Shown here in pieces: positions 1,851 to 48,600 of a stretch of DNA of 64,000 nucleotides (the stretch's first letter is position 1; each line of letters opens with the position of its first letter). The DNA is from Obrimoposthia wandeli (lineage: Eukaryota). The notes under the pieces are model-generated. The model saw nothing but the letters and a program-made list of their open reading frames with translations, was not told where the DNA came from and made no database searches. A program made the translations under genes and the position numbers. The stretch lies in NCBI GenBank assembly GCA_977020255.1, contig CDROCS010001029.1, forward strand, positions 1-64,000, written 5' to 3'.

Positions 1851-2279
1851 CATTGATTTACAAGATCCAAGATTGAAGGATAGCACATCAAACAGACAAA
1901 TAAACTAAAATTGATGTAATTATAGAGAATCCTATAAAATCGGTAAAAGATCACAATTTCTCATTCAAGGCCACACATTATCAGAAGATAAAGCACCAGT
2001 TGTGTTCGAACCATCACGAGATTTCATAGAGAAATACGAATTACTAGAAGTTGTGGTACAGTATGTCTGATCGAAAAACTACAAAAATACCAGTTAGACT
2101 GATGAATACAACCAACAATGACATTCTATTATACAGAGGAATGAGGTTGGGAAAAGGCCATAGCACAGATGGAGAATCCCACCGTGTGCTATGAAACTGA
2201 TAAAGATACGAATGATTTGATGAAGAAATAGTAATCCAATCAGAAAGACTGACAACTAGAGAAAAGACAATTACTTGAT

Positions 2280-3000
2280 CTAATACATAAATTTCCAAAA
2301 GTAATTGCAAAAAATCCATATGACATAGGAGAAACACCTGTCATAAAAACATACAATACCACTGACAGAAGATAAAGAAATGTGAAGAAGACCCATATCA
2401 GAGTACCATTACAATTACAAGATGAAGTAAAAAGTCAGGATCAGAAGATATGTGCCCAAAACAGGAGTAATTAGACCAAGTTGCCATTCTCAGCACCAGT
2501 GGTGCTGGGTAAAAAGAAGGATGGGAAAATGAGATTCTGTATAGATTTCAGAGAACTGAACAAGATCACAAGAAAAGATGTGTATCCATTACCTAGAATC
2601 GAAGAGATGCTCGATAAATTGGGTAATTCAGATTATTTTATTAAACATTAGATTTGCAGAGTGGATAATAAGCAAATCGAGATAGAGGAAGAGGATAAAC
2701 AAAACAGCCTTTTCCTGCGGAGATGGATTATACGAATGCGAAAAAGATGCCAGCCCGGACTGACAGGAGCCCAGCAAATATTTCAGCGTTGCATGAATTT
2801 TGTACTCGCATCGTGTGCAAAACACGATGGCTTATATCGATGACATAATAATATTTTCGAAAACGTTCGGAAATAACATTTAAAAAAATCTCGAAGTTGT
2901 ATTTAAAAGGCTGGAAAACGCTAAATTAAAAGTTAAACCTACAAAATGCAGCGGGCTAAAGAGCGAGTAACATTTTAGATTGGCTATAGTAATTAAAGAA
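2280..3000 (+). pseudogene. Gypsy reverse transcriptase (frameshifted)
   Basis: PFSAPVVL.KKKDGKMRFCIDFRELNKITRKDVYPLPRIEEMLD, GLTGAP.IFQR and MAYIDDIIIFS (YIDD 2833-2844). Confidence 0.95.
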
Positions 3001-3249
3001 GGCATTCGAACGGATCCAGCAAAAGATCAGGTGCAAAAGCGCATTTAGCGCCAAAAGACTGTTATGAGATTACAGAGTTTTTTGTGTCTTGCGAATTACT
3101 ATAGACGATTTTGTTGAACATTTTTCAGATATAGCAAATACCATTGAGAAAGTTGACGAGAAAAGATGAGAAGTTCATATGGGAGAAGAAGCCCAACAAG
3201 CGTTCGACATTTAAAAGAAAGACTGATAAAAGCACCAATATTAGCGTTT

Positions 3250-3630
3250 CCAGATATAAAACCAGACAATTCATACTCATGACAGATGCACTATGCTGTA
3301 GGAGCAGTATTGGGAAGGCAAGAGGATGACGAAGGAAGAGAACACGCTCATTGCGTATGCAAGTAGAGGATTAAACAGAGCCGAAAGAGGACAGGCCTTG
3401 TTATCGAAAAGGAAGGTCTAGCCATAGTATTCATGTAGACAGTACAGACACTATTTGCTAGGACAAAAAGTATTCCTGTATACAGATCACAAACCACTAC
3501 AGTTCTTATATAAACATAGAGATGAGATGAGTAGATTAAACAGATGGTTTCTAAAATTGGCCGAATTCGATCTAGAAATCCGTTATAGAACCGGAAAGTC
3601 GAATGGCAACGCAGATTGTTTATCGAGATT
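3250..3630 (+). pseudogene. Gypsy RNase H (frameshifted)
   Basis: FILMTDA, IAYASRGL, EKEGLAIV, YTDHKPL, RWFLKLAEFDLEIRYRTGKSNGNADCLSRL. Confidence 0.93.
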
Positions 3631-3879
3631 GACAAATGTAGATGAGAAAGGAAACATAATTCCAGAAGAAGATGAAACCAATGACCAAAAAAGGAGAAGC
3701 AAATCTACTGACGATTTTATAAAGACGGGTAAATAGACAAAGAGATCATCAAAGAACAGAAAGAAGATGAAGAACTCTGAGTCTAATCAAAGAATTGCTG
3801 GTGAAAGGAGATCTAAACGATGAAATGACGAAAAATACTGATAAAAGAAGGAATCTTGTATATTGTCAATAATGTCGGA

Positions 3880-5083
3880 AAGATAGTAGTAGTAATTCCG
3901 AAGTCATTGAAAACAGCAGTGATGATCCAGTATCACGACGGAACACTGGGAGGACATCTGTCAAGGAAAGACAATAGCCAGAATCAAAGAGAAGTACCAT
4001 TGGGATGGTATGGAAGACGACATAAAACAATGGTGTAAACAATGTAAAGTATGTTTAACCAGAAAAGACACCGGAACTCGTACTAAAGTTCCGTTGAACT
4101 AATGTACAGTTCCCTTGGTACCAATGGAATTCATGATGGATATATTGGGACCATTGAGAGAATCAAGTAAAGGAAACAAGTATGTCATAGTATTTACGGA
4201 CTACATGACGAGATGGGTAAAGCATTATCCCATGCAGAACCAGAAAGCTGAAACAATAGCGCAAAATCTTTAGTGGAAAGGAGATAATATTTCGATACGG
4301 AGTGCCTTGTGAAAGTTGTTAACGGATCAAGGTAAGAACCCCCACTGAGAAGTCATAAAAGCAGTATCGAAGTATAGCTCTGGAATCATGAAGCAAAACT
4401 TCACTATATCACCCACAGACAGATGGTCTGGTGGAAAGTGTTTTAATAAAACTTTATGTAAGGATGGTACAATCCTATTGCCTTTAGACAAGGCAAGAGG
4501 ATTGGGATAAATATTTACCTTCATGTTTATATGCTTACAGGAATTCAGTTCGAGAGGCGACAGGTCACACACCATTCTATCTGGGATGTATTTCCCTCAG
4601 ACAGAACAATATGCCAATGGATCTGGAGTGGACCGAGCCAACATCCCAGTACCTAGAAACTGAACAATACATTGGGTTGTCGTCATGAAGGAAAGATTAC
4701 AAGATGCTTGGATTCCAAAGCCGGATTGAAGTTGAAATTCAATCAAGAAGTTCTTACAAGGAACAATACGACAAAAAGCAAAAACCACATTACGAATTTA
4801 GAGTCGGAGATCAAGTGATGATATTTTATCCAGTCATCGAACCAGGTCTATCGTTTAAACTTCTCATAGACCATACAAAGGACCATACAAGGTGATCCAG
4901 ACAACCTCAACAAATTTGAAAGTAACCAACGAAGAGAATCGGAACAAAGAACTGATGATTGTACATGCAAATCGATGCAAATTAGTACCAAATAAAGATA
5001 ATGCGTCACGATATGAGTTAAGATCACAGAAATCGAAGCCAAATACCAATACCATTAAGCTTTGCTACACGAATGGTAAGTGA
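3880..5083 (+). pseudogene. Gypsy integrase (HHCC, DDE core, GPY module; frameshifted)
   Basis: YHDGTLGGHLS...WCKQCKVC, MDILGPL, FTDYMTRW, LLTDQG, DGLVE, GPYKVI...VHANRCK. Confidence 0.93.
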
Positions 5084-5099
5084 TCGGAACTACATAAAC

Positions 5100-6480
5100 A
5101 TGATGACGAGTGGTAGCGAGAAAAACCAGCGAGAATTGGTATGCTCAGAATGAAGTGCCAAGAGGAAAAGGAAGTAATCCGACACATCGCACCACAAGAG
5201 ATATTAGAAGAAGACGAAGAGATAATAGTTGTCTTCGAAAACACAACCAACAGATGTGGCGAAAGAAGTCATTGTGAAAGATGCACTGACAAACGAATTT
5301 CTGTGCGAACTTAGAGTGTCATACTATGACGGAATACACTAGTCGCAGCGCTTTATCAAAATTCCAATGTGTTTACGACTGAGAAAGGAGATAAATCGAA
5401 ATCACATTGACACCAAACATAGTTGCATGGCAGAACTATGACAGTACTGAAGCAGGACTAGCCAGTCAGGAAGAAAAAGAACCGGCCGGTGGTCACATAC
5501 TGCATGGTACACCAAAAGACTCAAACAAGAATACCACGATGTAATAATGGTATTACGTAATTCACATGGGAAAAGAGATATCATGAGAGTCCATTTAATC
5601 GACGCTGACACTGAAAAGATAATTTGTCAGATGGACACTAAATATTTTGATGGAAAGACAATTGTATGTTGTATACCAGAATCTCACCGATTAGAGACAG
5701 ATCAAACGGAAGTATCTGTAAGGTTGAGCGTAATAGAAGGATTCCATTCGCCAACCCATCCGGAAGTGACTAACAATAAAATCATCAAAGCAACGGCAGA
5801 GTTACGCATTGACAGCGGATACCGGAAGTGGGAAGCTAAAAATAAAAAGCCACAAAGAATCAATATGATCCGAGAACAAGTGACCAACTCAATCCAGCCA
5901 AAATATCATGCTGAAATAGTATCATCCGCGCCAAGTGTAATTACATCGATAAACGACGAAATTATAATTTTACTAAAATCGATGGCCGTCATCAACCGAG
6001 ATACGAGTAAACTTAATTAATTATGCGAAGACACCGATATCTAAGCTGAATGTTACCTATTTTGATGGATTGTCCATCATGGGTAAATTGAAACAATTGT
6101 CATGTGCTATGGAGCACAGTTCCAAGTTGAGATACTTAAAGATAGTGTAATACCGTATCCGATTCACAAATGAAGGGAAATCAATCCAATTGTTCTGACA
6201 CCTTCATTGGTTTCTGGTTCAGACAGACATACCAGAATACCCCGCTTCGAGCGAGTCTAGTGAAGACAGCGAACCGGAAAGTAACGATACAGAATCAACA
6301 GAATTCGAAGATAACATAATAGAGCGATCTGGAAGAACCATGGAGATTGGAATTCGCTAAAGAGAGCAGAAAAAGACAAACATAGAATTTGTGAAACAGA
6401 ATATACAAGAAAGACGAATTAAATTTCGCAGAGGAGACCGAGTCGGAAGAAGACTCAACAAAGGAACAGACATCAGAGAC
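5100..6480 (+). pseudogene. Unknown post-integrase accessory ORF(s), frameshifted, with acidic linker
   Basis: Purine-rich coding-like sequence including the 157-aa ORF 5547-6020 and S/E/D-rich stretches that run in frame into the DUSP ORF. Confidence 0.45.
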
Positions 6481-6484
6481 AAAG

Positions 6485-7141
6485 ATGAATAATCCTCCAG
6501 CAATACGAATGCTGAGAGGAAAGAAACTGGCAAAACTAACTAACATCGACGAACAGATAGAGAAGAGATTAGAAAGACTAAAACTTGAAGAGTCAGAATT
6601 AATGCCACAAATGAGTGAGATCATTCCAGGTAAGTTGTACCTCGGAAATGTGGAGGATGCAACAGATGAAAAGAAACTGTTGGAACAAGGAATAACATAT
6701 GTGATCAACGTTACAATGAATCACAAATCGCAATATCAGACGATCAGAGCTATGACATTAAGAGTAAAAGACTCAATGGACGCCAATCTTCTCGAATGGT
6801 TCGTAGAAACAAACGAAATACTTCACAGAGAACTCCGGAACAAAGGAAAAGTGTTGGTACATTGTCAGAAAGGAATTTCTCGATCAGCAACCCTAGTATT
6901 AGCATATCTAATAAAGACTAGACGAATGCAGGTACTAGAAGCGTTAAAATACCTACAGGAGAGAAGAAGTATTGCAAACCCAAATCTTAATTTTTTGGGA
7001 CAGTTGGCAAATTACCAACTTCTGTTGCAAGAACAAAGACGGATGGACGACATTCCTGAGGATCCAAAGGAAAAGAATTTCCTCCAAGCATTATCACTGA
7101 CTGGGTTATTTTTAGCCGAGTCGACAAAATTACACAGATAA
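6485..7141 (+). CDS. Dual-specificity protein phosphatase (DUSP/DSPc) carried by the retrotransposon
   Basis: SEIIPGKLYLGN, ITYVINVT, D of LRVKDS, catalytic VLVHCQKGISRSATLVLAYLI, EALKYLQERRSIANPNLNFLGQL. The ORF is uninterrupted. Confidence 0.95.
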   Translation: MNNPPAIRMLRGKKLAKLTNIDEQIEKRLERLKLEESELMPQMSEIIPGKLYLGNVEDATDEKKLLEQGITYVINVTMNHKSQYQTIRAMTLRVKDSMDANLLEWFVETNEILHRELRNKGKVLVHCQKGISRSATLVLAYLIKTRRMQVLEALKYLQERRSIANPNLNFLGQLANYQLLLQEQRRMDDIPEDPKEKNFLQALSLTGLFLAESTKLHR

Positions 7142-7843
7142 TGCCAAAAGTATTTTTATGTCATCCAGGAGATATAGATACTGCTGGATTAAAGTTCCAC
7201 AGTATCAACCGAGTAATCAATATTGTTGAAGTCGGAAACGAGATAATTAGTCTGTGTCAAAATACTGAAGACGACACCACTCGATACATACATGCTTCTA
7301 ATCGAGAGATAAACGATGCACAACAACATCTGACGAAATTGACTCAAACCATCCGCTTGAAGTCACAGAAGGAAACGGCGTTCTGATATATCAGAAAAAG
7401 GTACGATGTTAGCGCCTACCATAGGTGTATCCTTGTTGGTAGAGTACCATGGTCACACGCCAGAAGAAGCGATGGTCTACATCAAACAGAATAGACCGAA
7501 TACGGAATTCAAACCGTTACTCGTTCGAGAAATAGAAAAATACACCGAAAAAAGGAAGCAACAACGAGAAATAAATGAAGCTACAACAACAGTGCCCAGC
7601 TTTCAATACCAAAGATTGCTAGCGATAGGCTTGTTAAGTTGTTTAATGCCGATAACGGGAGCACAAGAAATAGACTCCAACCTCGGAAATAGTTCCTGGT
7701 TCAACGAAATCCAAAATTACACCATACAGTACCATACACCGGCACTGATGATGCTATTAGTATTGTTAGGACTAATTGATGTGTGGATCATCCGAAAATG
7801 TCTTCGATCTATGAGAACCGACAGTAAAGATTTCAGTTTGTAA
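7125..7843 (+). pseudogene. Second, catalytically dead DUSP-like domain followed by signal-like and transmembrane segments
   Basis: Single-base repairs join ITQIMPKVFLC...INRVINIV...KENGVLIY(S)EKGTMLAPTIGVSLL...EEAMVYIKQNRP; then LLAIGLLSCLMPITGA and ALMMLLVLLGLIDVWII. Confidence 0.65.
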
Positions 7844-7845
7844 AG

Positions 7846-9054
7846 ATGAAAAGACCAAATGGACCAACAAACAAAGTGCTTGTGTATCTAGACGAAAGGA
7901 TCGAAGACAACATAGTAAATGAAGCGATATTTTACCCACAAAAAATAGAATACTGAATCAATTCCGAATAGATTACGAAGCTGACCGACAGCACACACTT
8001 GACCGAATATCAACAACATTCGCCGGATGCAAGCGAAGTAAACGAGTAGTAAAGGAAATACAAAAAGATGCTGATACAACAGGACCAACGTATATATTCC
8101 ACGGAGATGTCATCAAGACACGCGAGTATGGAAGTAAGAGAGTAATAATTGAAACAATGGAAGGACATCACACATGCTTGTCCGCCAAAAATGGATTCGG
8201 GAAGTTGACGATACAAGGTAAACCGGTACAGTTGATTATCGGAAGAGATGGAATCGAGGAGATGTCAAAACAACGACAGACAACAAAACGATACAATCAG
8301 AAACAGATATCTCTCAAACGATTGATAATTAAAACCCTTTGTAAAGGTCGGTCAAAGCCCTGTGCACCGTTGCACAAGGATTGATTTATGGAGTAGTAAT
8401 TGGATTGGTACTGCAAGCCATGCCAACCAGTAAAGCCGAATTGATGACACTATCCGAATATAATTTACATTTGAGAAATCTAGACAACACCCTAGAAATA
8501 ATCAAGACATCCCACAGTAGAGCCGTGATGATCATGTGTGTAAAAGGATGTCCAGGACGAATGTATAGTCCCAGCGACCGAAATGATAACACTTAATGGA
8601 CATTATGGAGTTAGTGTTGTCACATGTGAAGACTACATATTTGGACAAACTAAAATAGTGCTTCTCAGTGACATGTCCAACCAAAGTGCACACAAATTTA
8701 AAAATATTAACCATCAAGAGTAAAGGAATACCAGCAGTACGTTATGGTATTCTAGAATTGGTTAATCCAATACTCGCACTGATCATTGGATTTATAATAT
8801 TAATATTACTCATCTTGTTTTGTTGTTCAAAGATAGAGTCGAGATCAAAAAAGAAACGTCATGATCTCGCAAGACGAACAGGTCAAATGAACTTACAAAA
8901 ATTCAACACAATTATACCAAGACCACCATTTCTAGATGAACCAGCACCAGAGTACCAGCCAACGATATATGAACATATTGAGGAAAGACCGTACTATATG
9001 AGTAATTTGACTTGTTTCATTGAAGTTCCTGAGTTTAGAATCGAACGATCATAG
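7846..9054 (+). pseudogene. Accessory ORF ending in a type-I-membrane-like protein (frameshifted)
   Basis: Hydrophobic LIYGVVIGLVLQAMPTSKA, Cys-containing ectodomain, TM ILALIIGFIILILLILFCC, basic stop-transfer, Pro/Tyr-rich tail (PAPEY, IYEHI). Confidence 0.55.
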
Positions 9055-9059
9055 GAATC

Positions 9060-9575
9060 ATGCTGATCGTACAAATCACCACTACCAAGGCTAGTTATGA
9101 GATCATGATCAGTAAATGGAGACAAGACGTAATACGGGCAATATACATAGAAATTCCCTTACTAAAAACAAATCACGTAGTAGACATTCATCTACAGACG
9201 TCAGCAACTGACAATATCGATCAGAAATTGTATGTCATTCGACAGGTCAGAATAAAAATCGACCAAAATACACCTGTTTACAATTTAATATTATTGCATC
9301 ATGAAAGAGTGTTATACCTACGGATAACAATATCAAAGAGGAAGCGGATTATCCAAAGTATCCGAACAAAGTCCTTAATATTACCTAGAGATGAGCGCAT
9401 CTGGAAAATTGTCGACAGGATTATGATCACAGGTAGACGACGTAAAGCCGTATGGAATTCCGTTAGGTTATTTTTCAGATTGCTAGAAACTGACAGCGTG
9501 ACAGTAATGTGTCCCAACCCAGATGGCGTAATCAGATTCGAAATCCAAAGCCAAATGTTAGTACCACATTTTTAA
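9060..9575 (+). CDS. Hypothetical 171-aa basic protein (retroelement accessory ORF)
   Basis: Uninterrupted ATG-TAA ORF packed 5 nt after the previous stop and 6 nt before the next ATG; no family recognised. Confidence 0.6.
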   Translation: MLIVQITTTKASYEIMISKWRQDVIRAIYIEIPLLKTNHVVDIHLQTSATDNIDQKLYVIRQVRIKIDQNTPVYNLILLHHERVLYLRITISKRKRIIQSIRTKSLILPRDERIWKIVDRIMITGRRRKAVWNSVRLFFRLLETDSVTVMCPNPDGVIRFEIQSQMLVPHF

Positions 9576-9581
9576 CACAGA

Positions 9582-10330
9582 ATGTCTGTGTAATCGAATT
9601 GCCAGTAATTCTACAGAGACCTCGACCATAATCATGATAATAACAGGTGAAATATTCTACATAACTCTAAGATACCAGAACCGTCGATTTCGCAGATACG
9701 GTATAAGTATCAAACCCAGGAAAATCATTCCCAGAAGACCAATCCTTAGTCAAAAAGAAGGCAAAGGTAATCGAAAGTAAACGACATTCCAAGAAACCGA
9801 CAGTGATCAAAACAAAGACAGAAGTGAAAGAAAAGAGTCCAATCCCAGAAACCAAAGTACAATTATTAAGAGGACAAGAGTGAGGGGAACGATCCCACTA
9901 GATCCCAAACATCATTTCCAATCCAAAATAATAATACCTGTTCCATCAGAAACAAAACACCCAAATTCCCGAATTTTTAGAAAATCGGACATAATACATG
10001 GAAACCGATCAAAACCCATGGAAATATCATTCGAACCGACAAACGACAAAATGAAGTATGATTATAAAACATCAGACAGCGGAATAACAGCGGTCAATGC
10101 CCTAATTGGAATGGCCGTAGTGTCAACAGCGGTGGTTCTACTTTACAATCGTGTGCGTAAAAGGCAGTCAAGTATGCCCAGGAATACGACGAAAATGCGA
10201 AGGATTGCGATGCTGTGACACACCCATCATGGAGGAAGTGGAATAGACTTACCTCCACCTCCCATCAAGATATGATGAGTCTGAGGAGGTTGTAGATAAA
10301 TCAGTGTGTGAAATATGTAGAAATATCTAG
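9582..10330 (+). pseudogene. Accessory single-pass membrane protein (frameshifted)
   Basis: ATG at 9582; ORF piece 9880-10218 contains TM AVNALIGMAVVSTAVVLLY followed by RVRKR; polyproline segment near 10250. Confidence 0.5.
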
Positions 10331-10398
10331 AAGCGATTGTACAAATAGTAGAAGTATATAAAACTCATGTAGAAATTAATCATCATCATGTATTTAGA

Positions 10399-10760
10399 AT
10401 GGCCGAAGAATGCCCAATATGTTTAGAAGATCTAACCGAACGAAGAACAAGACCCGAAACCTGCAACCATTTACACCACGAGGAATGTTTATCGACATGG
10501 ATCAGAACTTATGGACAGTTCGGACACCCAACATACCCTCGTTGCCCTATATGCAGAAGACAATTCGCAAGATTCGTCATGTTAGAACCCAACCAAAGGG
10601 ATGTATATGTACAGGTGGTATTCTGCTGGAAGAATTTCGGAGAGTGTTGGTGTTATTACTGTTTGTCAGATCGACAAAATCAGACCACTTTTTGTGTAAA
10701 GATCACACAACCACCAGTCCTCAATCGAGCCCAAATTCAACATCAACCCTCCCACAGTAA
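10399..10760 (+). CDS. RING-H2 protein 1 (probable frameshift near 10700)
   Basis: C-x2-C-x13-C-x-H-x2-H-x2-C-x18-C-x2-C, followed by CWK-x4-CWC-x2-C. Confidence 0.85.
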
Positions 10761-11065
10761 TGTCTGGAGAATGTTCCATCTGCTACGAGAGCATCGTGGA
10801 CTTCTACACCAAGCCCAACAACTGCGATCACCTTTTCCACGTCGAATGCCTCGAGACGTGGATCCCCATCGCAAACAGCAACAACCCCCTCGACTTCCCA
10901 ACCTGCCCGATGTGCAGAGCGACCTTCTCAGTACACTACGTGTACAACCAAGACAGCCTCCAAGCAGTGGTACCCATCGTACACTGCTGGAAAACCATCT
11001 GCGATTGCTGGTGCTCGTTCTGCGTGGAGGAGCGAAGCACAGGCCAGCCCAATCCCCAACAATAA
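10760..11065 (+). CDS. RING-H2 protein 2 (paralogue of RING 1)
   Basis: Intact 101-aa ORF with the same RING-H2 spacing as RING 1 and the same CWK-x4-CWC-x2-C tail. Confidence 0.9.
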   Translation: MSGECSICYESIVDFYTKPNNCDHLFHVECLETWIPIANSNNPLDFPTCPMCRATFSVHYVYNQDSLQAVVPIVHCWKTICDCWCSFCVEERSTGQPNPQQ

Positions 11066-11407
11066 TCGAAGGTAACTTTCTGACTTGAACGTGACATCAT
11101 GAACTTTACCCTGTGTATCGCATACCGCGATAAATTAGCTACCATAATTGTAATCATAATTATATAATCTTGTGAACTGTAAATTGACCATTACCATTTT
11201 TATGTATGATGTTTAACTGAAATTGTAATTATTATACTGAATTTCTAAAAAAGACAATTTTTATGCTTAGTGTGAATGCGTAAACATGCCTAAAATCGAA
11301 ACAAAACTCGGTAGGATTAGATAACTAAGGATTCATTTTGAAACAAAAATTAAATTAACGATGAGAACGGTGAACCCCAAATTGAAAGGAGTCAATTTCT
11401 CATGCAG

Positions 11408-11905
11408 ATGTTGTGCTCCGTATGCATGGAGAAGATTTGGGCGGCATCAGCATCCCCTGTCGGCTGCCGCCACAAGTTCCACGAATCCTGCCTATATACT
11501 TGGGCCCGACTTCGACCCGAAGGACATGTCAATTGCCCTTTTGCCGCACTCCCTTCGCGGAATGGACACTACATTGTCGAGGGCGCCACAAGGGCACCCA
11601 TTCGCTCACCAGCTGAATTGGTGACGAGCACTGCCAGTGCCCCGACTGTATCGCGCGCCGTCGCGATGCAAAAACTCGCCCTCCGCGAGAAATACCGGTC
11701 AACCCGTGACCCCCGCTCATGGCAGCGTGGCCGTCAAATATGGCTCAAGAATCGCGGAGTACACGGGCGGTACACGACCATTTTTCACCCGAGCCAACAC
11801 CTCACCATGCGCCAGCAGATGATACTGTACGATGGCGGCCCACCATCGTATCCAGAACTACCACTGGAGCAGGTCTTGCTGTTTTTGAGAGACCGGAACA
11901 ATTGA
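11408..11905 (+). CDS. RING-H2 protein 3 (frameshifted at the last ligand; PPxY near C-terminus)
   Basis: CSVC-x13-CRHKFHESC-x14-CPF(C): one extra T in the T-run at ~11539 restores CPFCRTPF. PPSY at 11840-11851. Confidence 0.75.
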   Translation: MLCSVCMEKIWAASASPVGCRHKFHESCLYTWARLRPEGHVNCPFAALPSRNGHYIVEGATRAPIRSPAELVTSTASAPTVSRAVAMQKLALREKYRSTRDPRSWQRGRQIWLKNRGVHGRYTTIFHPSQHLTMRQQMILYDGGPPSYPELPLEQVLLFLRDRNN

Positions 11906-12427
11906 CAAATCCCTGACAATCACCCTTGATCCTTTCCCTTGAATAATTTTTTTTGGTTGTCGTAGTAATAATGTATAAATTGAGACATGCTCCAACTTAT
12001 GCATTATAATTTCCACTAAAAACCGGGTTTTGGAAAATTTTTTTGGGCATGTTTGTTGAGGTTGAATGATTGTTTTGTAGGGATGAACCTAAAATCAACA
12101 GCCAAAGGCTTATTTAAGTAAAATCGATACGTTCCGGGGACGTAACTTTTTTGGAACCCCCGAGGTATGTTAAGGTTGAGAATTAAGAAAATTAAATATT
12201 TTAGTTGATTAAATACTAAAATAAAAAAGCCTTGAAAGCAAGGTCGAAAATCAAATTAAAATATTAAGTTGAATTTTAGAAGTAAAATTAGTGAAATATT
12301 AGGGTAAAATTAGGAGGACCACGAAGGTCGTGTATTATGCGAAAATGTATAAAAGTTAAACTAATTAACCCAAAAAGGGACAATTTCAAAAACAATTAAG
12401 AAAAATTAAGAAGAAAAACGGTTAATT

Positions 12428-12622
12428 AAAACCGTCAATCAAGAAGAAAAAAGGTAAGCACATTTCGTGCAGTAAAATCAAATTTAGTTTTTCAGCTGCC
12501 GTTGACTGACAGGAAGAAGATTCTCCAGAAATCAAACCGTCAATCAAGAAAAGGTAAGCACATTTTGTGCAGTCAAATAACTCTTAAATCTCATTTCAGC
12601 TGTCGTTGACAGACAGGAAGAA
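12428..12622 (+). repeat. Two imperfect ~90-bp direct repeats in putative U3
   Basis: AAACCGTCAATCAAGAA...GGTAAGCACATTT.GTGCAGT...TTTCAGCTG.CGTTGAC.GACAGGAAGAA at 12428-12518 and 12534-12622. Confidence 0.85.
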
Positions 12623-12625
12623 CCA

Positions 12626-12632
12626 TATATAA
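12626..12632 (+). promoter_or_regulatory. Candidate LTR TATA box
   Basis: TATATAA directly after the U3 duplication; position is plausible but unverified. Confidence 0.45.
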
Positions 12633-12727
12633 GGAGAACCCAATAGTGACAAATCACAATCACAAATACGGGATCGACTGAGAAACAACGAGGCAGGAAG
12701 AAACAATCCCCTCGTCAGACGAACCGT

Positions 12728-12982
12728 TAACTGATTTGAAGAAACGATCCTAACTGATTTGAAGAAACGATCCTAACTGATTTGAAGAAACGATCCTAAC
12801 TGATTTGAAGAAACGATCCTAACTGATTTGAAGAAACGATCCTAACTGATTTGAAGAAACGATCCTAACTGATTTGAAGAAACGATCCTAACTGATTTGA
12901 AGAAACGATCCTAACTGATTTGAAGAAACGATCCTAACTGATTTTGAAGAAACGATCCCTGACTGATTTCGAAGACGATTCC
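12728..12982. repeat. 23-bp tandem array in LTR (9 perfect plus 2 degenerate copies)
   Basis: Unit TAACTGATTTGAAGAAACGATCC read directly. Confidence 0.97.
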
Positions 12983-13067
12983 GCCAGGCTCGCAAACACC
13001 ACATACGGACCCTACACCGGACGTCCCACGAGTTGCTGTAACTGGTAAGAACACAGACTAGGTTCGT

Positions 13068-13500
13068 TCATTGCCCCTAGTAGGCAATTAGGATATATTC
13101 ATTACCCCTAGTTGGTAATTCTATATTTCCTTAATAATACACGAATTCATTGCCCCTAGCTGGTAATTAGGATCTTGTCTCTTTAGCACAATCATTGCCC
13201 CTAGTTGGTAATTAGGTTCGGACCTTTATTCATTGTCCCCAGCGACAATTAGGAAACTTACCAGACGTTTTTTCCCGTAAGATTCATTGTCCCTAGCTGA
13301 CAATTAGGTTCCTTCATTGCCCCTAGTTGGTAATTCGGATAAATATTCATTGTCCCTAGTAGACAATTCGGTAAGACTCATTGTCCACTAGCTGACAATT
13401 CGGTTCGCACATTGTCCGTAGTTGACAATTAAGAGTAAGTTTTATTGTCATCTTGACAATTAGGATAATTAGGAGATCCCTTGTCTACAGTAGACAATTT
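13068..13500 (+). repeat. Array of 12 palindromic hairpin repeats with unique spacers in LTR
   Basis: Consensus TCATTGYCCCTAGYWGRYAATTMGG; stems ATTGCC/GGCAAT, ATTACC/GGTAAT, ATTGTC/GACAAT; spacers about 5-30 nt. Confidence 0.92.
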
Positions 13501-13770
13501 GGGTCGAACACACACAGAGAGAGTAAGGAACAAAGAAATATTTGGCTAGAGATAAGAAGTAGGAGCGAAGAAAATTAAGAGAGTTGCGTTATAGATTAAC
13601 CAACCTGAGTAAGAAGACTAAACCTAAGAAACTTAATCACCTGAACGTAAAATCGATACGTGGTTCATCCCCACTTCTTGTAGAGACTCACAGAAGTCCT
13701 TTAGGAATTTTATCATACTTTTTAGAAATACGTACATAAACGTATTGTGGTGTTAGTTACGTGAATTTTG

Positions 13771-13776
13771 AATAAA
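13771..13776 (+). terminator. Candidate LTR polyadenylation signal
   Basis: AATAAA about 205 nt before the LTR end. Confidence 0.4.
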
Positions 13777-14109
13777 CAATTTCCTACATTAGAACAAGTT
13801 GTTTTTACACCCTTCAGACTAAGAGACATCAAATCAATACCTTCAGATAGTACAAGAGATTAGGCAACCATAACACTAAGTAGGCCACGACCAACTTTAA
13901 GACCTGCTTCTATTCGAACTCACGTTGGGGCCCTCCGCACACTAAGAGGATCTGTACAAGTCTCGTATAGAAACCCCAACACATGCACGAAATTTCACTC
14001 CACACACATGCACGGTTTTAAAGGACAGAGTGGGGGAAGGGGTGTGGATTAGACCGGACACATCCACCTACTGTTATCTTGAGTCTGGTTATAAGGTTTA
14101 CATCTATTT

Positions 14110-14340
14110 ACATGAACTGTTTGTATTTCTCTTTTTTTAACTAGAGATTTTACTTTTAAATTTGGTTCAATTACTTCGATAATTTCATATGGTCCTTCGT
14201 ATGGTTTATGGAACTTTTTTATTAAACCTATTTGATGTAATGGTACGTGAATTAATATTTTGTCGCATGTCTGAAATCTATGTTGTTAACCAGTTTTATC
14301 ATAATTTTCCTTCATAGATTCTTAGGAAAATTTTATATTT
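14110..14340 (-). mobile_element. Gypsy integrase C-terminal fragment
   Basis: Minus strand reads KKFHKPYEGPYEIIEVI (GPY motif). Confidence 0.6.
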
Positions 14341-14559
14341 AAATTTGCTTTATATTTTTTAAGGATAGTTATTTAAGTATTTGTTATTTTAATGTTCATT
14401 TAAATTAAACTCTAAAATTCATCTAGTATAAATAATCAGGTTAATAATATTATTTTTCCTCTTTCCTAACCACATTTTCATCATTAATTAACAATTCAAA
14501 ATATTTGGATGATGGCGAAAAAGTAAATATTAATGGAACTATGAAAAAAGAATATCAGT

Positions 14560-24600: not shown

Positions 24601-27600
24601 TGTTTATCCAGCCTGTTATGAACTCTACACAGTATATTATTACACAATCCAACAGCAGACTCTTCGTATTTTAGATATGGACCAGGAGTTTTTTGGTAAT
24701 GAGGTAATCGGAGGATTCATAATATTCATACAATCATTCGACACGTACCGTACCAAACACCCAAACACAACATATGGGTAAATTATAAAGTATACATTAC
24801 ACTGTCAATTATGGATTTCTAATTTATTTTTGAATTTATTCCATGAGGAGCATTAGATAAAGCATGAAACAGATGGAAGTCAAAACGTCTTGAAATATTA
24901 CTATAAATAAAATATTTTCTAAAATAAAAATACATTGCATTGAACAAAGTTCCTGTTTATGCAGACCCATTCTGGGGGTCGTCAATGTCTGTGAGGGAAT
25001 GATTATCCCTGGACGACTCGTATTGGAAAATATCAAGGTCATCAAACATGAAATCATACATGCATTAGTAAGTAATATATTTATAAATAAATTTCGATCG
25101 ATTTATTTTCAATTCTTTACTCAACTTGAAAATGTCTTTATAACCCTAGAACTATATCTTCGTTTTGAGAATATGCGTATTATTCGAGACTATGCAATAC
25201 CCCAAGTGTCAATAACAACTTTGATGTACCTAAAAGAAAAATGTCTCCTCATTAAACAGCCAGCCTAATTTTTACATGAAATCTGCATCTGGTACCTCTT
25301 TGAAAGTCAAAAAAAGTCTATTTTAATTTCAAAGAAGACATTCCTTACCATAAATTACCACTATGTACTGACGAAATAATGACAGTAGATTTTCAACAAC
25401 AAAAAATACACGAAGACATGCATAAGGATTTATCGAATTGGCGCTTATCTAAAATACTTTATTTTGTATTTTTTTAATATTACAATGAAATGTGTGTAAA
25501 CTATTTATAAAAACCATCAATAACACGGCTTTATATGGCTTAACTTACACTTTATGGTTAAAAATACAATTGCGTAAAAATGATCTTATTATAATCCCAA
25601 AAAAATAGATAACATTACACTTGGTTCTCAAACAGCAGCTTTAATTATTGTTTTAGCGCATATACAGTATAGATAACATATTAAAACAGCGAATTTACAG
25701 TATAGATAACCTATTAAAACAGCGAATTTACAGTATAGATAACCTATTAAAACAGCGAATATACAGTATAGATAACCTATTAAAACAGCGAATTTACAGT
25801 ATAGATAACCTATTAAAACAGCGAATTTACAGTATAGATCAGGGGTGGCCAACAAGTCGATCGCGAGACCAATTTTGGTCGATCACTCGCAAGTTCGGGG
25901 TTTGCGAAAAGTATCTCATAAAAACTTTTAACTTAAAAAGTATAAATACTTTTTATTCAAATGTTTTCTGTGATTAGCTCATAGAAAGGATATAATTTTT
26001 ATATTATCATTATTTTTATTAGTTTGTTTTGACATTTGAAATGGTTTTATTAAGTTCTTTTTCTTTGCACTTTTGCAATTCTGTTTTCTATTTAAAGCTT
26101 TTGTCGGTAGATAACTTTTTTGCTGCTGCTACTTTTTGCTACCTATATAAAATTTATTTGAATTGGGATATTACAAAATCAGCATAATACTTCGGCTTAT
26201 GATAAAAACTTATACAATACATATAAAAACGTATATAAATGATGTTTATTTAATAAATCTGAAATACAGTGCGTTTAAAATTGACTTGTATTTACACTTC
26301 TGAGAAATTTATGACTATTAAAATAAATAATTTTCATATTTACAATTAACTAAAACTAAACTTCGTTCCGTCCTGACCGATTCTCATACTGAGGACTCAT
26401 TGTTATTGTCTTTGTCAGGATATACTCCAAATTATGATGCACTAGTAAAGGAAATGCAGACTCAGGTTTCTCATTAATTTAAAAAGTTTGAATGAATAAA
26501 TGTTATTAATAAGTGCTCATGTTGTTTTAATTCCTCTGGACATAAGTTTTTTAACCCATTAAATAAATACTCATGTATGTAGATTATTTACCCCTTAATC
26601 ATGGAGCTCGCCAAAGTGCACGTCGGTATAAAAGCACATTGCAAAAACATCCCCTTCTTACCTAAAAAATAGGTCGATCGCGACACAATTTATAAATAAA
26701 AAGTAGATCTTATGTGCACCAAAGTTGGCCACACCTGGTATAGATAACCTATTAAACAGCAGATATATAGTATAGACTCGTCGAGGCTGGGTATCTCCGT
26801 GTGCAAAAAACGATACATATTTCTATTAATGTACAGAAATACTCACAAATAAAATATTTCAAATGTATATTTGTTTTTTCATATAAAGTATGATTCATAT
26901 CAAAATGAAAATAAATTTTATTCCAATTAATTGTTTGTGTAATTAGTATATTATTTAAAAAGAAGTTAACACATTATATACACAAGGGAATGCTTCCAAA
27001 TTGAACACTCGGAATTGAATGTAATTTTGTATATATTATTGGTAAAATATTATACAAGTTTCGAGTACTATAAAACTTTGGTGCAAACACAGGTAAAAAA
27101 ATAATAAATAAGTTATTAGTGTCTCCAACATCGTGGGAGTGTTGGGGTTTCTATATGAAACTTTTCTAATATAGATCCTCAGACAGAGGGCCCCAACGTG
27201 AGTTCTATAGAAGCAGGACTTGTAGATGTTTGTGGCCTACTTGTGTTATGCTTGCCTATCTCAATATATATCTGAAGGTTTGTTATCTCTAATTTGAGGG
27301 TCTATAACAACGCTGTCTAGTTGCAGGAAATCTTTATTTCTAAAACACACGAATTTACGTCTTAACACATTCTAAAAAACAGCAATACTAATCCTAGTTA
27401 CTTTACACAAAATCCTTACACAAGTGGGGATGAACCACGTATCGATTTTAATTTTAGGGTTGATTGTTTACTTGAGTCTTTACTCTAAAAATAACGGCTG
27501 ATTTTAGAGAGCTGGTTGCTCTAAAAATATGAATTGATTTTGGATAGGTCTAACAATTGTACTGTGTCCGGCTCAGTGGGACTTGTTCAAATGGGGAAAA

Positions 27601-45600: not shown

Positions 45601-48600
45601 CCAACAGGACGGTGCGCCCTCTCACACTGCGAACAAAACTCAGGACTGGTGTGAGAATCACTTTCCAGCTTTCTGGAGGAAGGAATTGTGGCCTCCTTCA
45701 TCACCTGACTTGAACCCTCTGGACTTTTGTGTCTGGTCCATCTTGGAGAGAGAGGCCTGTGCTACAGCCCATGATAATACAGAAGCTTTGAAGAAGTCTC
45801 TTAAGCGGGAATGGGCCAAAATTCCCCAGGAATCCTTTCGTGCCGCAGTGAAGAGCTTCAGGGGGAGACTTGAGCGTGTAATTGAAGCCAAAGGCGGCCA
45901 CATTGAAAAATACATAGTATACATGTTAAATAGAGCTCTAACAAATTGTGTGTGTTATTTTTTGTTTAATTTCAACCTTTATTAATTGTTAAATTTAACG
46001 TTTTATGAGATCGGGGACTTTCTCCGCACCCTGTATAGCCCAAACTTCATAATGAACTCCAATTTGGAAACCAAAATACAAACGGTATCAAGCTTAGGCC
46101 TAGGATACATTTTATTTCTTGTGGTCATCAATTTGCCACTAACTTAGCAGAATTATTTGGAAGGTTTTTGGATTAAAAATCACTGCCAATGATTTCATTA
46201 ATTATCGGCGTTGTAGAACTGTGACATAACTCAAAGAATTTGAAAAATAATGTTAAAAATATAAATTAAAATGTTTAATTTAACCTCAAAATGAAGCATT
46301 TAAACAAACATAAAAAATCTTTTGAGAATCATTCAAATTAAAACAGTCTAATTTTCTTTCGAGCAGTAAAATTTTTGCTAGTCGTGTAATTACTTTCTGC
46401 ACGTTACTGTTTATAATTGACAAATGATAATAGACATACTAGACTCTAGTAACTAGTAATATTAGCCCATTTAGGGCAGTGTAAGCCGCTTTATAATGCA
46501 AATAAATAAAATTTACATTAATAAGTTTAAAGTAATTTCGGAGAATTAATGACATGTTGATGGATGATCAAGCCAATATCCTCAGCCGGGTATCAGTCCT
46601 TCTGACACAGCTCTATTTCAATGTTGCTCAATAGCTAAAATCTTGGGGAGTTCTCTGATATTGGAGAAGAATTTGTTGTATGTGTTGGGGTTTCTAATTG
46701 AAACGTTTCGCTTTGATTCGATTAGATTCTCGTATGGGGCCCCCAACGTGAGTTCTGTAGCAATATGGCTTACAGATGGATGTGGCCTATTTTGGGTTTA
46801 TCTTACTTAACTTAGTCTCAAACTGAAGGGTTTGTGATATTGTTTCGTGAGATATGTACAGAGATATCTTCACAATACATATATTAGGGTTCTCACTAGT
46901 GTAGTGTGATGTGTAAAGTATTTAGTGGTGCTTTACAAGTATACGATAGAGACCTGAAGTAATCCTAGTCAAACTGTAGGAGAACTATATTATTACACAA
47001 ACTAAAAAGGGTTTAACAATTTGACAAGTAGGTTGTCGTACAACAATTAATTCAGACACGCTATAACAAGGAAATGACCCTCTACTGATTTTACGCTCCT
47101 AAACCAAAATTGCATAGTTAAGGAAAATGTTATTTAGCCACAACTTTGGTTCCTTCAATGTAACTTTTACTTTACCTAGAAATATAACCAAATTTACTTT
47201 TACTTTACCTAGAAATATAACCAAATTCCCATTTACTTTATCTTGAAATATAACTAAATTTCCGTTTACTTTATCTTGAAATATAACTACTTCTCTTTTA
47301 CTTTATCTGTAGATACAACAAAATTCATTTTTAATTTTTCTTGAAATAAAACTACTTCTCACTAAGATCAGTTTTGATGTGAATTGATTCGGTCCAGACG
47401 TCTGTGTCGCAGTTCGTTCCGAAAATGTTCTAGATCCGTTACGAGCTGGTATGGTGGTTCCGGAATGTCACACCGCGATCCGTTCTGCTGATATCCCTTC
47501 GGTTTTAGGTTCTGAATATTGTAGTGTTGAGATTCTTCTTCTCGCAAGCTATAGTCCTATTTATATTAATCTTCTATTGAGTTTCCAATTTATCAATCCT
47601 CTATCGAGTTTTCAATTTATATCAATAAAACCTGTGCTTCAGCTGTGAATTCCCGACTTATGTAATGGGAAAAATATTCAATTAAAATGGCACTTAGTTT
47701 AAGTGCGTCTTACCTTCGCTAGTCCTGGCAGTTGGTAGCTCGCACGTCCTAATGGACTCCGAGTCTAGGAGTGAATAGCAACTGGTTTATTTCCCAGCGG
47801 TTGGGCTACTTGCTATTTAAATTAGCTTATTGTTCTTCTTTCCCTGGGTTTTTCGTTCTGTCTTAATAGTCTTTTCCTTATTCGTCTTAATATTATTCTC
47901 TTGACCCCGTCCATTTAATTTTACCCCTTCAAGATCCTAAGTTATTTTAATTTTATTTTAAAACAATTTTTTGATTTTTTAATTATATTAATTCTATTTT
48001 AACCTTCAATTCAAGGTTTACGTTTTCTATAAACAGCTATTACTTTAATTTTATTTTAAAACTTTCCTAATTTAAACATATGCATGGTCAGATAGGAGAG
48101 TTATTGTATATGTATCTAATTTATCTTTATTTTTTCAGTTGCTAGACCATCGCATTACTTCACTCTCAAGTTCTGATGAAAATGGTAATACATGATATCA
48201 GTTTTCACACATACATAGAAAGCGTAGCTATTGCTTTTGTAAGAAAACAACAGTACACACACGTAAAATAACGAGTCGTAAAAAACATTCTAATTGGAAA
48301 GAAGTAAAACAAAATGTTCCTCATAGTATAAAATAGGAATATTTAAACAAAATTAAATACTGTTTCGAAATAAATGGAATTTGTGAAGCGGGTATGTCCA
48401 TTCAACTAATGTACACCATGAATCCAGCACTGTTTTTATTTATCATTTCAAAGATTTCATTGACTTATTAGAAAGAAATGTAAAAATATCGTCTAAACCA
48501 AAGTTTACTCTCATTCAGATTCTGACAAACCCAAATACGATTTGTTCGGACGTCAGCAACTTCAACCTTTCTGGTTAGTAAGAATAATTTTATCTAAGTT

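What the first reader, a model, noticed from the sequence alone, without database searches (positions are those of the whole stretch)
13068..13500. CRISPR-looking array of 12 co-varying hairpins with unique spacers inside the LTR
Seen: 6-bp stems around a mostly 7-nt CCTAGYW loop. Stem changes are compensatory (ATTGCC:GGCAAT, ATTACC:GGTAAT, ATTGTC:GACAAT), and the only non-Watson-Crick pairs are G-T (units at 13149, 13194, 13316). These are tolerated wobbles on the element's sense RNA but A-C mismatches on the other strand. Spacers are unique, about 5-30 nt. Inference: a selected multivalent RNA element (Gag packaging, export or protein-binding array, like MS2 or CTE/RRE repeats). Alternative: a DNA enhancer, since many units contain the Sox/HMG core CATTGT/ACAAT.
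Basis: partly seen in the sequence, partly recalled or inferred. Interest (0 to 1): 0.85.

Follow-up and report, generated by a model that had tools for sequence, protein, structure and literature searches.

The report
Hairpin-repeat array in a retrotransposon LTR
Twelve short palindromic (hairpin-forming) repeat units sit in the variable, probably transcribed middle of a gypsy-type retrotransposon LTR, and their two arms have changed together, which suggests a selected stem-loop array, but rests on one locus and few independent changes.

Summary
Twelve units of about 26 nt lie at 13067-13502 (+). Each has a 6-bp stem and a mostly 7-nt loop, and the motif occurs nowhere else in the 64 kb.

The array is inside an LTR, which I could delimit at 12168-13981. 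Two diverged copies of the same LTR family lie elsewhere in the window. One is a solo LTR with a 4-bp target-site duplication.

All three LTRs carry a tandem array in the same slot, after a TATA box; in LTR_A and LTR_B it also lies before a conserved AATAAA, so it is probably in R. The unit sequences differ between the LTRs. The other arrays show no structure, except that each 64-bp unit of LTR_B keeps a related 6-bp hairpin.

Pairing holds in 71/72 stem cells here and in 83/84 when LTR_B is added. Three of the six pairs show changes on both sides. The two covarying arm columns are uncoupled from the variable sites between them.

The weak points:
- Few independent events underlie the covariation.
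- The G-T versus A-C strand argument is not significant.
- Predicted hairpins are marginal (-3 to -5 kcal/mol) and compete with inter-unit pairing.
- LTR_C shows no pairing.
- No close relatives could be fetched.

The CRISPR likeness is superficial. The best reading, at about 0.4, is a multivalent stem-loop platform on the element's RNA. The rivals are palindromic DNA binding sites (0.3) and a neutral minisatellite (0.22).

The parts
12168..13981 (+). LTR_A, the LTR that holds the array (1814 bp)
   Evidence: Both ends are homologous to a second copy, LTR_B. The termini TGTTAAG...CCCAACA fit the TGTTRNR...YNYAACA signature of animal Metaviridae LTRs (PMC3601003). Three copies end at the same ...GAAACCCCAACA.
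12454..12599 (+). Two short GTAAGC...TTTCAG intron-like pieces (12454-12495 and 12554-12599) inside a ~100-bp direct duplication, upstream of the TATA box
   Evidence: Read. LTR_B and LTR_C have GTAAG...YAG pieces in the same relative place. Function unknown.
12626..12633 (+). TATA box (TATATAAG), candidate promoter of the LTR
   Evidence: A TATA box sits in the same relative place in LTR_B (28241-28234) and LTR_C (47565-47558), although that region cannot be aligned. The start site is predicted, not shown.
12728..12975 (+). 23-bp tandem repeat, 10.7 copies, mostly 100% identical
   Evidence: No excess RNA structure (z +2.45).
13067..13502 (+). The array: 12 hairpin or palindrome units of about 26 nt with variable spacers
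13067..13092 (+). unit 1, stem ATTGCC/GGCAAT, loop CCTAGTA
13098..13123 (+). unit 2, stem ATTACC/GGTAAT, loop CCTAGTT
13146..13171 (+). unit 3, stem ATTGCC/GGTAAT (one G-T), loop CCTAGCT
13191..13216 (+). unit 4, stem ATTGCC/GGTAAT (one G-T), loop CCTAGTT
13229..13253 (+). unit 5, stem ATTGTC/GACAAT, 6-nt loop CCCAGC
13283..13308 (+). unit 6, stem ATTGTC/GACAAT, loop CCTAGCT
13313..13338 (+). unit 7, stem ATTGCC/GGTAAT (one G-T), loop CCTAGTT
13346..13371 (+). unit 8, stem ATTGTC/GACAAT, loop CCTAGTA
13377..13403 (+). unit 9, stem ATTGTC/GACAAT, 8-nt loop CACTAGCT
13408..13433 (+). unit 10, stem ATTGTC/GACAAT, loop CGTAGTT
13441..13464 (+). unit 11, stem ATTGTC/GACAAT, 5-nt loop (or 7-bp stem with 3-nt loop)
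13477..13502 (+). unit 12. The outer pair is C-T in the common register. Read one step inwards, the stem is TTGTCT/AGACAA with loop ACAGT.
13649..13674 (+). Block identical in LTR_A and LTR_B (the 26 nt searched match exactly; about 29 aligned columns are identical), the best-conserved stretch of the LTR. It starts with the 15-nt word that also lies at 12118-12132.
   Evidence: Role unknown.
13771..13776 (+). AATAAA polyadenylation signal, followed by a GT-rich run (13798-13806)
   Evidence: AATAAA is conserved on the same strand in LTR_B (27338-27333). The motif set matches PMC3601003.
27140..28800 (-). LTR_B, a diverged solo copy of the same LTR family, flanked by a 4-bp duplication (CTCC). 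It carries a 64-bp tandem array (27640-28124). Each unit contains ATTGTA-N6-TATAAT, with 5 Watson-Crick pairs and one G-U on the sense strand.
46683..48080 (-). LTR_C, an older third copy whose 5' bound is approximate. It carries a 33-bp tandem array (47163-47360) in the same slot, with no supported pairing.
2253..5062 (+). Broken Ty3/gypsy-type pol (RT, RNase H, integrase) upstream of the LTR, in the same orientation
   Evidence: tblastn against relatives gives 32-46% identity. The aligned pieces contain 50 in-frame stops and at least 5 frame changes. These are counts only.
5451..11905 (+). Same-strand ORFs between pol and the LTR: an intact DSPc phosphatase ORF (6485-7141), two RING-finger ORFs (10399-11088 and 11402-11905), and several ORFs with no family match
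   Evidence: Whether they belong to the same insertion as the LTR is not settled.

Best explanation
The array is this lineage's version of a roughly 32-bp tandem-repeat array that occupies a fixed slot in the LTR of a Ty3/gypsy-type retroelement family. The slot lies downstream of the TATA box and upstream of the AATAAA signal. It is therefore predicted to be in R, which is copied into both ends of the element's full-length RNA.

In this lineage each unit is a 6-bp stem with a conserved CCUAG-type loop and conserved immediate flanks. Complementarity of the two arms has been kept while the arm sequence, the loop length and the spacers changed.

I read it as a set of about 12 weak stem-loops displayed on the sense RNA, or on the equivalent single-stranded DNA during reverse transcription. 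These would act together as a multivalent binding platform for a protein, encoded by the element or by the host. That protein would handle the full-length RNA, for example in selection for particles, pairing of two RNAs, export or stabilisation.

Shown:
- The units and their position in an LTR.
- The sense strand.
- The covariation.
- The absence of such structure in neighbouring arrays.

Inferred:
- That the region is transcribed.
- That the pairing is selected at the RNA level.
- That a protein binds.
- Which step of the cycle is served.
For: - Pairing: 71/72 stem cells pair, two pairs show changes on both sides, and 1/500 shuffles matches.
- Linkage: the columns of pair 5 show only two allele combinations (C:G in 5 units, T:A in 7). 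Each of them shows all four combinations with loop columns 16-17 and flank column 25. The arms are therefore linked to each other but not to what lies between them.
- Register: own-unit pairing gives 1 mismatch in 72. Random pairing of 5' and 3' arms gives 6.8% mismatches, and neighbouring-unit pairing gives 3 in 66.
- Units 11 and 12 have shorter loops but gained an inner pair.
- The 26-nt unit is 82% conserved per column, while the spacers differ in length (about 4-29 nt) and cannot be aligned.
- LTR_B keeps ATTGTA-N6-TATAAT in 6/6 units of its 64-bp repeat, on its sense strand, with pair 6 switched from C:G to A:T. Such a fully paired relaxed motif occurs only twice in the other ~126 kb of strand, so p is about 0.01-0.03. 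The joint count is 83/84 cells paired, three of six pairs with double changes, and 0/500 shuffles.
- The region folds better than shuffles (z -3.05). The other tandem arrays of the three LTRs do not (z +0.38 to +2.45).
- All non-Watson-Crick pairs except one are G-U on the sense strand.
Against: - Independent events are few. There are perhaps two double changes within the array and one more in LTR_B, because tandem units inherit states. The shuffle control ignores relatedness.
- The LTR_B hairpin was found with a pattern that already fixed pairs 1-4.
- G-U versus A-C may be only one or two events.
- Single hairpins are weak (-3.0 to -5.3 kcal/mol). In the full region they are out-competed by inter-unit helices. 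Mean pair probability is 0.19 globally, and 0.41 (+) versus 0.29 (-) with local folding only.
- The minus strand folds at least as well.
- LTR_C units pair no better than slid controls. The other arrays in the same slot are unstructured, so the slot does not need hairpins.
- There is no Rfam match.
- There is no expression data.
- No relatives closer than 32-46% pol identity (46% over one 455-aa partial protein, 32-35% for the longer ones) could be fetched.
- This copy sits next to a heavily broken pol.
Confidence: 0.4

Rival explanations
1. The units act as double-stranded DNA. They form an array of palindromic binding sites for a dimeric host or element-encoded transcription factor. This would be an LTR enhancer or insulator, comparable to tandem enhancer repeats in retroviral and retrotransposon LTRs.
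For: - Tandem repeats in LTRs are common and can regulate transcription (PMC3601003).
- Planarian gypsy-type elements show tissue-specific expression (PMC8532177), although the host here is not identified.
- All three LTRs of the family carry a tandem array in the same slot, and most are not hairpins. This fits a sequence-level function, or none.
- Palindromes are typical of dimer sites.
- A distant relative (L011) encodes a bZIP protein after pol. It carries five copies of a 17-19-nt palindrome in its 3' non-coding region.
Against: - A homodimer selects each half-site on its own. It gives no reason for the two arms to switch together.
- The 7-nt centre and the flanks are conserved but not symmetric.
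- Half-site spacing varies from 5 to 8 nt, which dimers rarely tolerate.
- Five units lack the Sox-type core.
- Unit spacing of 30-54 nt is not helically phased.
- No accessory ORF of this element shows a DNA-binding domain, and the first ORF after pol is not related to the L011 bZIP.
Confidence: 0.3
2. The array has no function of its own. It is a hypervariable minisatellite in a repeat-prone part of the LTR. Palindromy was present in the founding unit and was spread by duplication. Apparent compensation comes from inheritance, conversion between units, or arm-to-arm template switching during reverse transcription or replication.
For: - The slot is hypervariable. LTR_A, LTR_B and LTR_C have different units (23 bp plus hairpin units, 64 bp, 33 bp), while the LTR ends remain alignable.
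- If the slot is in R, misaligned strand transfer between repeats would make arrays expand, shrink and reshuffle. This is inference.
- TRF sees a 95-bp higher-order repeat of three units, so blocks of units were copied.
- There are few independent events.
- LTR_C has no pairing.
- The adjoining pol is long dead.
Against: - The four-combination pattern shows recombination or recurrent mutation inside the units, yet the arm columns stay perfectly matched.
- Unit cores are conserved while spacers have diverged beyond alignment.
- Shortened loops were accompanied by new inner pairs.
- A hairpin with a different loop and a switched pair survives in LTR_B.
- Arms of 6 bp are short for arm-to-arm template switching.
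Confidence: 0.22
3. The array is a CRISPR-like or small-RNA-producing locus whose spacers are acquired from other nucleic acids.
For: Only the look of it: repeated palindromic units separated by unique sequence.
Against: - Units are 82% rather than about 100% alike.
- Spacers run from about 4 to 29 nt.
- No 12-mer of any spacer recurs in the window.
- There are no cas-like genes. The neighbours are retroelement pol, a phosphatase and RING ORFs.
- The context is a eukaryotic LTR.
- Stems of 6 bp are far too short for Dicer-type processing (established knowledge).
Confidence: 0.01

Closest known systems
Tandem repeats in the LTRs and untranslated regions of retroviruses and LTR retrotransposons (for example U3 enhancer repeats and the Tnt1 repeats cited in PMC3601003)
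   Same: A tandem array inside an LTR, variable between related lineages, and lying between conserved LTR ends.
   Different: Here the units are hairpin-forming with covarying arms. The array lies downstream of the predicted TATA box rather than upstream in U3. The spacers are variable.
The gypsy (mdg4) insulator of Drosophila: a cluster of about a dozen binding sites for the Su(Hw) zinc-finger protein in the transcribed 5' untranslated region (from my own knowledge)
   Same: About 12 short conserved units with variable spacers in a transcribed non-coding part of a gypsy-type element.
   Different: As far as I recall, those sites are not palindromes and work as DNA. They lie after the 5' LTR, not inside the LTR.
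Stem-loop response elements in the R or LTR region of complex retroviruses (TAR-type and RxRE/RcRE-type elements) and constitutive transport elements with repeated motifs (from my own knowledge; stem-loops in long R regions are also noted in PMC3601003)
   Same: RNA structure in the LTR-derived part of the transcript, binding a protein. The element may also carry extra ORFs after pol.
   Different: Those are one to a few larger structured domains, not 12 minimal 6-bp hairpins. No Rfam family matches. No binding protein is identified.
Dispersed packaging-signal stem-loops of single-stranded RNA viruses, and operator hairpins of the MS2/PP7 coat-protein type (from my own knowledge)
   Same: Many short stem-loops sharing a loop motif, individually weak and proposed to act together.
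   Different: A different kind of genetic element. No capsid-binding evidence here. Those signals are scattered through coding RNA rather than clustered in a repeat array.
CRISPR arrays
   Same: Palindromic repeats alternating with unique sequence.
   Different: Every defining feature fails. See the membership test.

Membership tests
LTR of an animal Ty3/gypsy (Metaviridae) element | Short inverted termini of the form TGTTRNR...YNYAACA | tested here: met
   LTR_A starts TGTTAAG and ends CCCAACA. LTR_B starts TGTTAGG and ends CCCAACA. The signature is from PMC3601003.
LTR of an animal Ty3/gypsy (Metaviridae) element | Repeated copies with the same ends, and a target-site duplication around a solo copy | tested here: met
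   Three copies end at the same ...GAAACCCCAACA. LTR_B is flanked by CTCC on both sides.
LTR of an animal Ty3/gypsy (Metaviridae) element | TATA box, AATAAA and a GT-rich run on one strand | tested here: met
   TATA at 12626, AATAAA at 13771, GT-rich run at 13798-13806. TATA and AATAAA are also present in LTR_B on the same strand. Their use is not shown.
LTR of an animal Ty3/gypsy (Metaviridae) element | A matching second LTR of the same insertion, with polypurine tract and primer-binding site next to the LTRs | tested here: inconclusive
   The 5' part of the element lies outside the window. No clear polypurine tract lies directly before 12168. The pol upstream is much more decayed than the LTR repeats.
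CRISPR array | Near-identical direct repeats of constant length | tested here: not met
   Mean column identity is 82%, and unit lengths are 24-27 nt.
CRISPR array | Spacers of near-constant length, derived from foreign nucleic acid | tested here: not met
   Spacers are about 4-29 nt. No 12-mer match is found elsewhere in the window. The unit motif has no array-type match in viral or metagenome contigs.
CRISPR array | Neighbouring cas genes in a prokaryotic or viral genome | tested here: not met
   Neighbouring ORFs are retroelement pol, a DSPc phosphatase and RING fingers. The window also holds piggyBac-type and Tc1-type transposase pieces.
Any curated RNA family (Rfam 15), including retroviral cis-acting elements | Match to a covariance model | tested here: not met
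   No match at gathering score in the window. None at E up to 1 in 12000-14100.
Structured cis-acting RNA (generic) | Base pairs kept through changes on both sides | tested here: met
   Two of six pairs within the array and three of six with LTR_B added. Caveat: few independent events.
Structured cis-acting RNA (generic) | Thermodynamically favoured fold on the transcribed strand | tested here: inconclusive
   z is -3.05 (+) and -4.0 (-). The unit hairpins have low equilibrium probability.
Structured cis-acting RNA (generic) | The region is transcribed | not testable with these tools
   No expression data are available. Any part of an LTR is copied into the full-length RNA at least once, provided the element is expressed (established knowledge).
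Dimeric transcription-factor site array (Sox/HMG or other) | A conserved half-site sequence at fixed spacing in every unit | tested here: not met
   The half-sites come in three sequence types, the Sox-type core is in 7 of 12 units, and spacing is 5-8 nt.
gypsy Su(Hw)-type insulator | Match to the Su(Hw) binding motif and binding of that protein | not testable with these tools

The most novel reading that the evidence does not exclude
An invertebrate Ty3/gypsy-type element carries, in a very long R region, a twelve-fold array of minimal stem-loops. These recruit many copies of one RNA-binding protein to both ends of its RNA. That would be a multivalent counterpart of the single response elements of complex retroviruses, evolving by repeat turnover in the LTR.
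Probability: 0.25. Interest if true: 0.7.

Novelty: new variant of a known kind. Interest (0 to 1): 0.45.

Why it matters
Cis-acting RNA signals of LTR retrotransposons outside yeast and vertebrate retroviruses are almost unknown. A repeat array whose units keep their pairing while everything else turns over would be an easy-to-recognise candidate signal.

It would also show how such signals can arise from ordinary LTR minisatellites. The family here offers three stages of that in one window: full hairpins, a hairpin in every second sub-unit, and none.

If the array turns out to be a DNA site array or neutral, the case still serves as a caution. Tandem inheritance can mimic covariation.

Tried and rejected
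Searches for other copies, to allow a proper covariation test:
- The RING ORF next to the LTR has no homologue in the protein collection.
- The phosphatase ORF has only distant cellular relatives, at 35-44% identity.
- The unit motif gave 0 hits in viral contigs.
- It gave 8 single, chance-level hits in metagenome contigs.
- A pol piece found only distant elements.
- The contigs I could fetch (L009, L011, L012, L013) have no such array.

The host could not be identified:
- A piggyBac-type ORF is 96% identical to a contig of run SRR6069114, but no paper names that run.
- A planarian origin is only a guess, from 30% GC and Burro-like distant relatives.

Defining the LTR from terminal inverted repeats and purine tracts alone was inconclusive. 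It was solved only by finding LTR_B.

I considered that the tail might belong to the minus-strand integrase fragment at 14056-14351. I rejected this because the LTR ends at 13981 in three copies and its AATAAA is on the + strand.

Other ideas that led nowhere:
- A pseudoknot or alternative hairpin between loop and 3' flank. It occurs in only 2 units and is sterically unlikely.
- Homology of LTR_C units to a hairpin. The slid controls do as well.
- A deleted LTR remnant at 12054-12167. Only the 15-nt word is significant.

- One search printed the bounds of open stretches across 1-12000, which coincide with stops in the broken pol.
- Alignment tools printed consensus lines by themselves.

Full report
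**1. What is there**

Between 13067 and 13502 on the + strand lie 12 units of about 26 nt. Each unit has a 3-nt flank (mostly TTC), a 6-nt arm, a loop, the complementary arm, and a 4-nt flank (TAGG or TCGG). The loop is CCTAGNT in 7 units and 5-8 nt in the rest.

| Arm type | Units |
|---|---|
| ATTGCC/GGCAAT | 1 |
| ATTACC/GGTAAT | 1 |
| ATTGCC/GGTAAT (one G-T; at 13149, 13194, 13316) | 3 |
| ATTGTC/GACAAT | 6 |
| Last unit: pairs one step inwards (TTGTCT/AGACAA); C-T at the outer position in the common register | 1 |

The strict motif occurs 11 times here and nowhere else on either strand of the window. A covariance model of the units finds no further significant match.

Start-to-start spacing is 30-54 nt. 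TRF sees a degenerate repeat with periods 30 and 95. Once the conserved flanks are counted as part of the unit, the unique spacers are about 4-29 nt. No 12-mer of any spacer recurs in the window.

**2. Where it is**

The first 5 kb of the window hold a Ty3/gypsy-type pol on the + strand (outer bounds 2253-5062). It is 32-46% identical to the nearest proteins found. It is badly broken: the aligned pieces contain 50 in-frame stops and at least 5 frame changes.

Same-strand ORFs follow up to 11905. They include an intact dual-specificity phosphatase ORF and two RING-finger ORFs.

No second LTR was seen at first. A sensitive comparison of 11906-14056 with the rest of the window then found a diverged copy on the minus strand. 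Reading it and aligning it gave the following.
- LTR_A runs from 12168 to 13981.
- LTR_B runs from 28800 to 27140.
- Both start TGTTA(A/G)G and end GAAACCCCAACA.
- LTR_B is flanked by CTCC on both sides, so it is a solo LTR.
- A third, older copy (LTR_C) ends at 46683 with the same terminus.

The termini fit the TGTTRNR...YNYAACA signature reported for animal Metaviridae LTRs. That report also lists the expected TATA, AATAAA and GT-rich motifs (PMC3601003).

The sense strand of LTR_A is the + strand, because AATAAA at 13771 is conserved in LTR_B on the corresponding strand.

The minus-strand integrase fragment at 14056-14351 belongs to another element.

**3. The array slot**

LTR_A and LTR_B align only over the first ~170 nt and the last ~330-480 nt. 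The middle is different. All three LTRs nevertheless share the same architecture:
- GTAAG...YAG intron-like pieces,
- then a TATA box (12626 in A, 28241 in B, 47565 in C),
- then a tandem array about 100-450 nt further on.

| LTR | Array in the slot |
|---|---|
| LTR_A | 23-bp repeat, 10.7 copies, followed by the 12 hairpin units |
| LTR_B | 64-bp repeat, 6-7 copies |
| LTR_C | 33-bp repeat, 5.8 copies |

The periods of 30-33, 64 and 33 nt, together with short shared words, suggest common descent from a ~32-nt unit. That homology is only suggestive.

Because the array lies between the TATA box and AATAAA, it is predicted to be in R. It would then be present at both ends of the full-length RNA. 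This is inference, since no start site is mapped. Whatever the subdivision, any part of an LTR enters the full-length RNA at least once.

**4. Is the pairing selected?**

Within the array:
- 71 of 72 stem cells pair.
- Pair 4 is G:C in 8 units, G-U in 3 and A:U in 1.
- Pair 5 is U:A in 7 units and C:G in 5.
- 1 of 500 shuffles reaches these values, and slid registers collapse to 10-66%.

Tandem units inherit their states, so I looked for signs of independence.
- The two columns of pair 5 show only two allele combinations.
- Each of them shows all four combinations with the variable loop columns between them and with the 3' flank column.
- Pairing within a unit (1 mismatch in 72) is better than between neighbouring units (3 in 66) or random arm combinations (6.8% mismatches).
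- Units 11 and 12 have shorter loops but an extra inner pair.

The related LTR adds one event. Each 64-bp unit of LTR_B contains ATTGTA-N6-TATAAT on its sense strand. That is five Watson-Crick pairs and one G-U, with a different loop, and pair 6 switched from C:G to A:U. A relaxed motif that is fully paired occurs only twice in the remaining ~126 kb of strand. Its presence in that ~800-nt slot therefore has a chance of about 0.01-0.03. The joint count is 83 of 84 cells paired, three of six pairs with double changes, and 0 of 500 shuffles. The caveat is that the search pattern fixed pairs 1-4.

LTR_C units pair no better than slid controls.

**5. What does not support the RNA reading**

- The G-U argument rests on one or two events.
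- The minus strand folds at least as well: z is -4.0 against -3.05.
- Single hairpins are worth only -3.0 to -5.3 kcal/mol.
- In the whole region they lose to helices between units. Mean pair probability is 0.19 on both strands. With pairs limited to 40 nt it is 0.41 (+) and 0.29 (-).
- The 23-bp, 64-bp and 33-bp arrays show no excess structure. The slot as such does not require hairpins.
- No Rfam family matches.
- No close relative of the element could be fetched.

**6. Explanations**

I put the stem-loop platform on the element's RNA first, at 0.4. It is the only reading that explains three things together: arms that change together, a conserved asymmetric loop and flanks, and tolerance of loop-length change.

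The DNA-site reading (0.3) fits the general habit of LTRs. It also fits the fact that sister LTRs have plain direct repeats in the same slot. A distant relative (L011) encodes a bZIP protein after pol and repeats a 17-19-nt palindrome in its 3' region. However, a dimer site does not predict covarying half-sites or variable spacing.

The neutral minisatellite reading (0.22) fits the turnover of the slot. If the slot is in R, repeat misalignment at strand transfer would explain that turnover (inference). This reading has to treat the arm linkage and the LTR_B hairpin as luck or as templated correction.

The CRISPR reading fails every test.

**7. Open points**

- The pol next to LTR_A is far more decayed than the LTR's 23-bp repeats (mostly 100% identical) and the intact phosphatase ORF. 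The LTR, the ORFs and the pol may therefore not share one history.
- A 15-nt word at 12118-12132 recurs at the start of the best-conserved LTR block at 13647.
- No clear polypurine tract precedes 12168.
- The host is unidentified.

**8. Slips**

One search printed bounds of open stretches that coincide with stops in the broken pol, and they are not repeated here. Consensus lines printed by the alignment tool were not used.

Noticed in passing
window 5451-11905 (+): A run of same-strand ORFs lies after the broken pol. It includes an intact DSPc dual-specificity phosphatase ORF (6485-7141; best relatives are cellular metazoan DUSPs at 35-44% identity). It also includes two RING-finger ORFs (10399-11088 and 11402-11905) that sit in GC-rich islands (0.5-0.6) within 30-40% GC surroundings. 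They may be accessory or captured genes of a large gypsy-type element, or unrelated retrogenes.
   Followed up: partly
window 2253-5062 versus 6485-7141 and 12728-12975: There is an age mismatch. The pol carries stops at nearly the random rate (50 in the aligned pieces, at least 5 frame changes). The phosphatase ORF is intact and the 23-bp repeats are mostly 100% identical.
   Followed up: partly
window 27140-28800 (-): Solo LTR of the same family with a 4-bp target-site duplication (CTCC) and a 64-bp tandem repeat (27640-28124).
   Followed up: yes
window ~46683-48080 (-): A third, older LTR of the family with a 33-bp tandem repeat (47163-47360) and a 27-bp repeat (47564-47620). Its 5' bound is only approximate.
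   Followed up: partly
window 13649-13674 and 27424-27449; also 12118-12132: A block identical between LTR_A and LTR_B (26 nt confirmed by search), far better conserved than the rest of the LTR. Its second half begins with TGG and looks like a primer-binding site, although it is inside the LTR. Its first 15 nt recur just upstream of LTR_A.
   Followed up: partly
window 12454-12495 and 12554-12599; LTR_B ~28421-28368 and ~28294-28251: Short GTAAG...YAG intron-like pieces lie upstream of the TATA box in all three LTRs. Conserved small palindromes lie in the first 170 nt of the LTR (CCTTGAAAGCAAGG at 12230, GACCACGAAGGTC at 12316).
   Followed up: no
window 14056-14351 (-): C-terminal integrase fragment of a different gypsy-type element on the other strand, abutting the region after LTR_A.
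   Followed up: partly
window 52527-53417 (+) and 45545-45985 (+): A piggyBac-type transposase ORF, 96% identical to a protein on a contig of sequencing run SRR6069114 (organism not found). Also a Tc1/mariner-type DDE fragment.
   Followed up: partly
window 25622-25872: A 33-bp tandem repeat of about 6 copies, unrelated to the LTR family.
   Followed up: no
L011 5741-6328 and 6679-7958: A distant gypsy-type element from a Tara Oceans metagenome. It encodes a bZIP-domain ORF right after pol and has five copies of a 17-19-nt palindrome (TGTAATCAGTGATTACA type) in its 3' non-coding region. This could be an element-encoded factor with its own sites.
   Followed up: partly
L009, L012, L013: Distant relatives with unusual gene content. 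L009 and L013 have a fusion-glycoprotein domain (Monjiviricetes_fusion) between gag and pol, as described for planarian Burro elements (PMC6431247). L012 has an RNase_T exonuclease ORF after pol.
   Followed up: no
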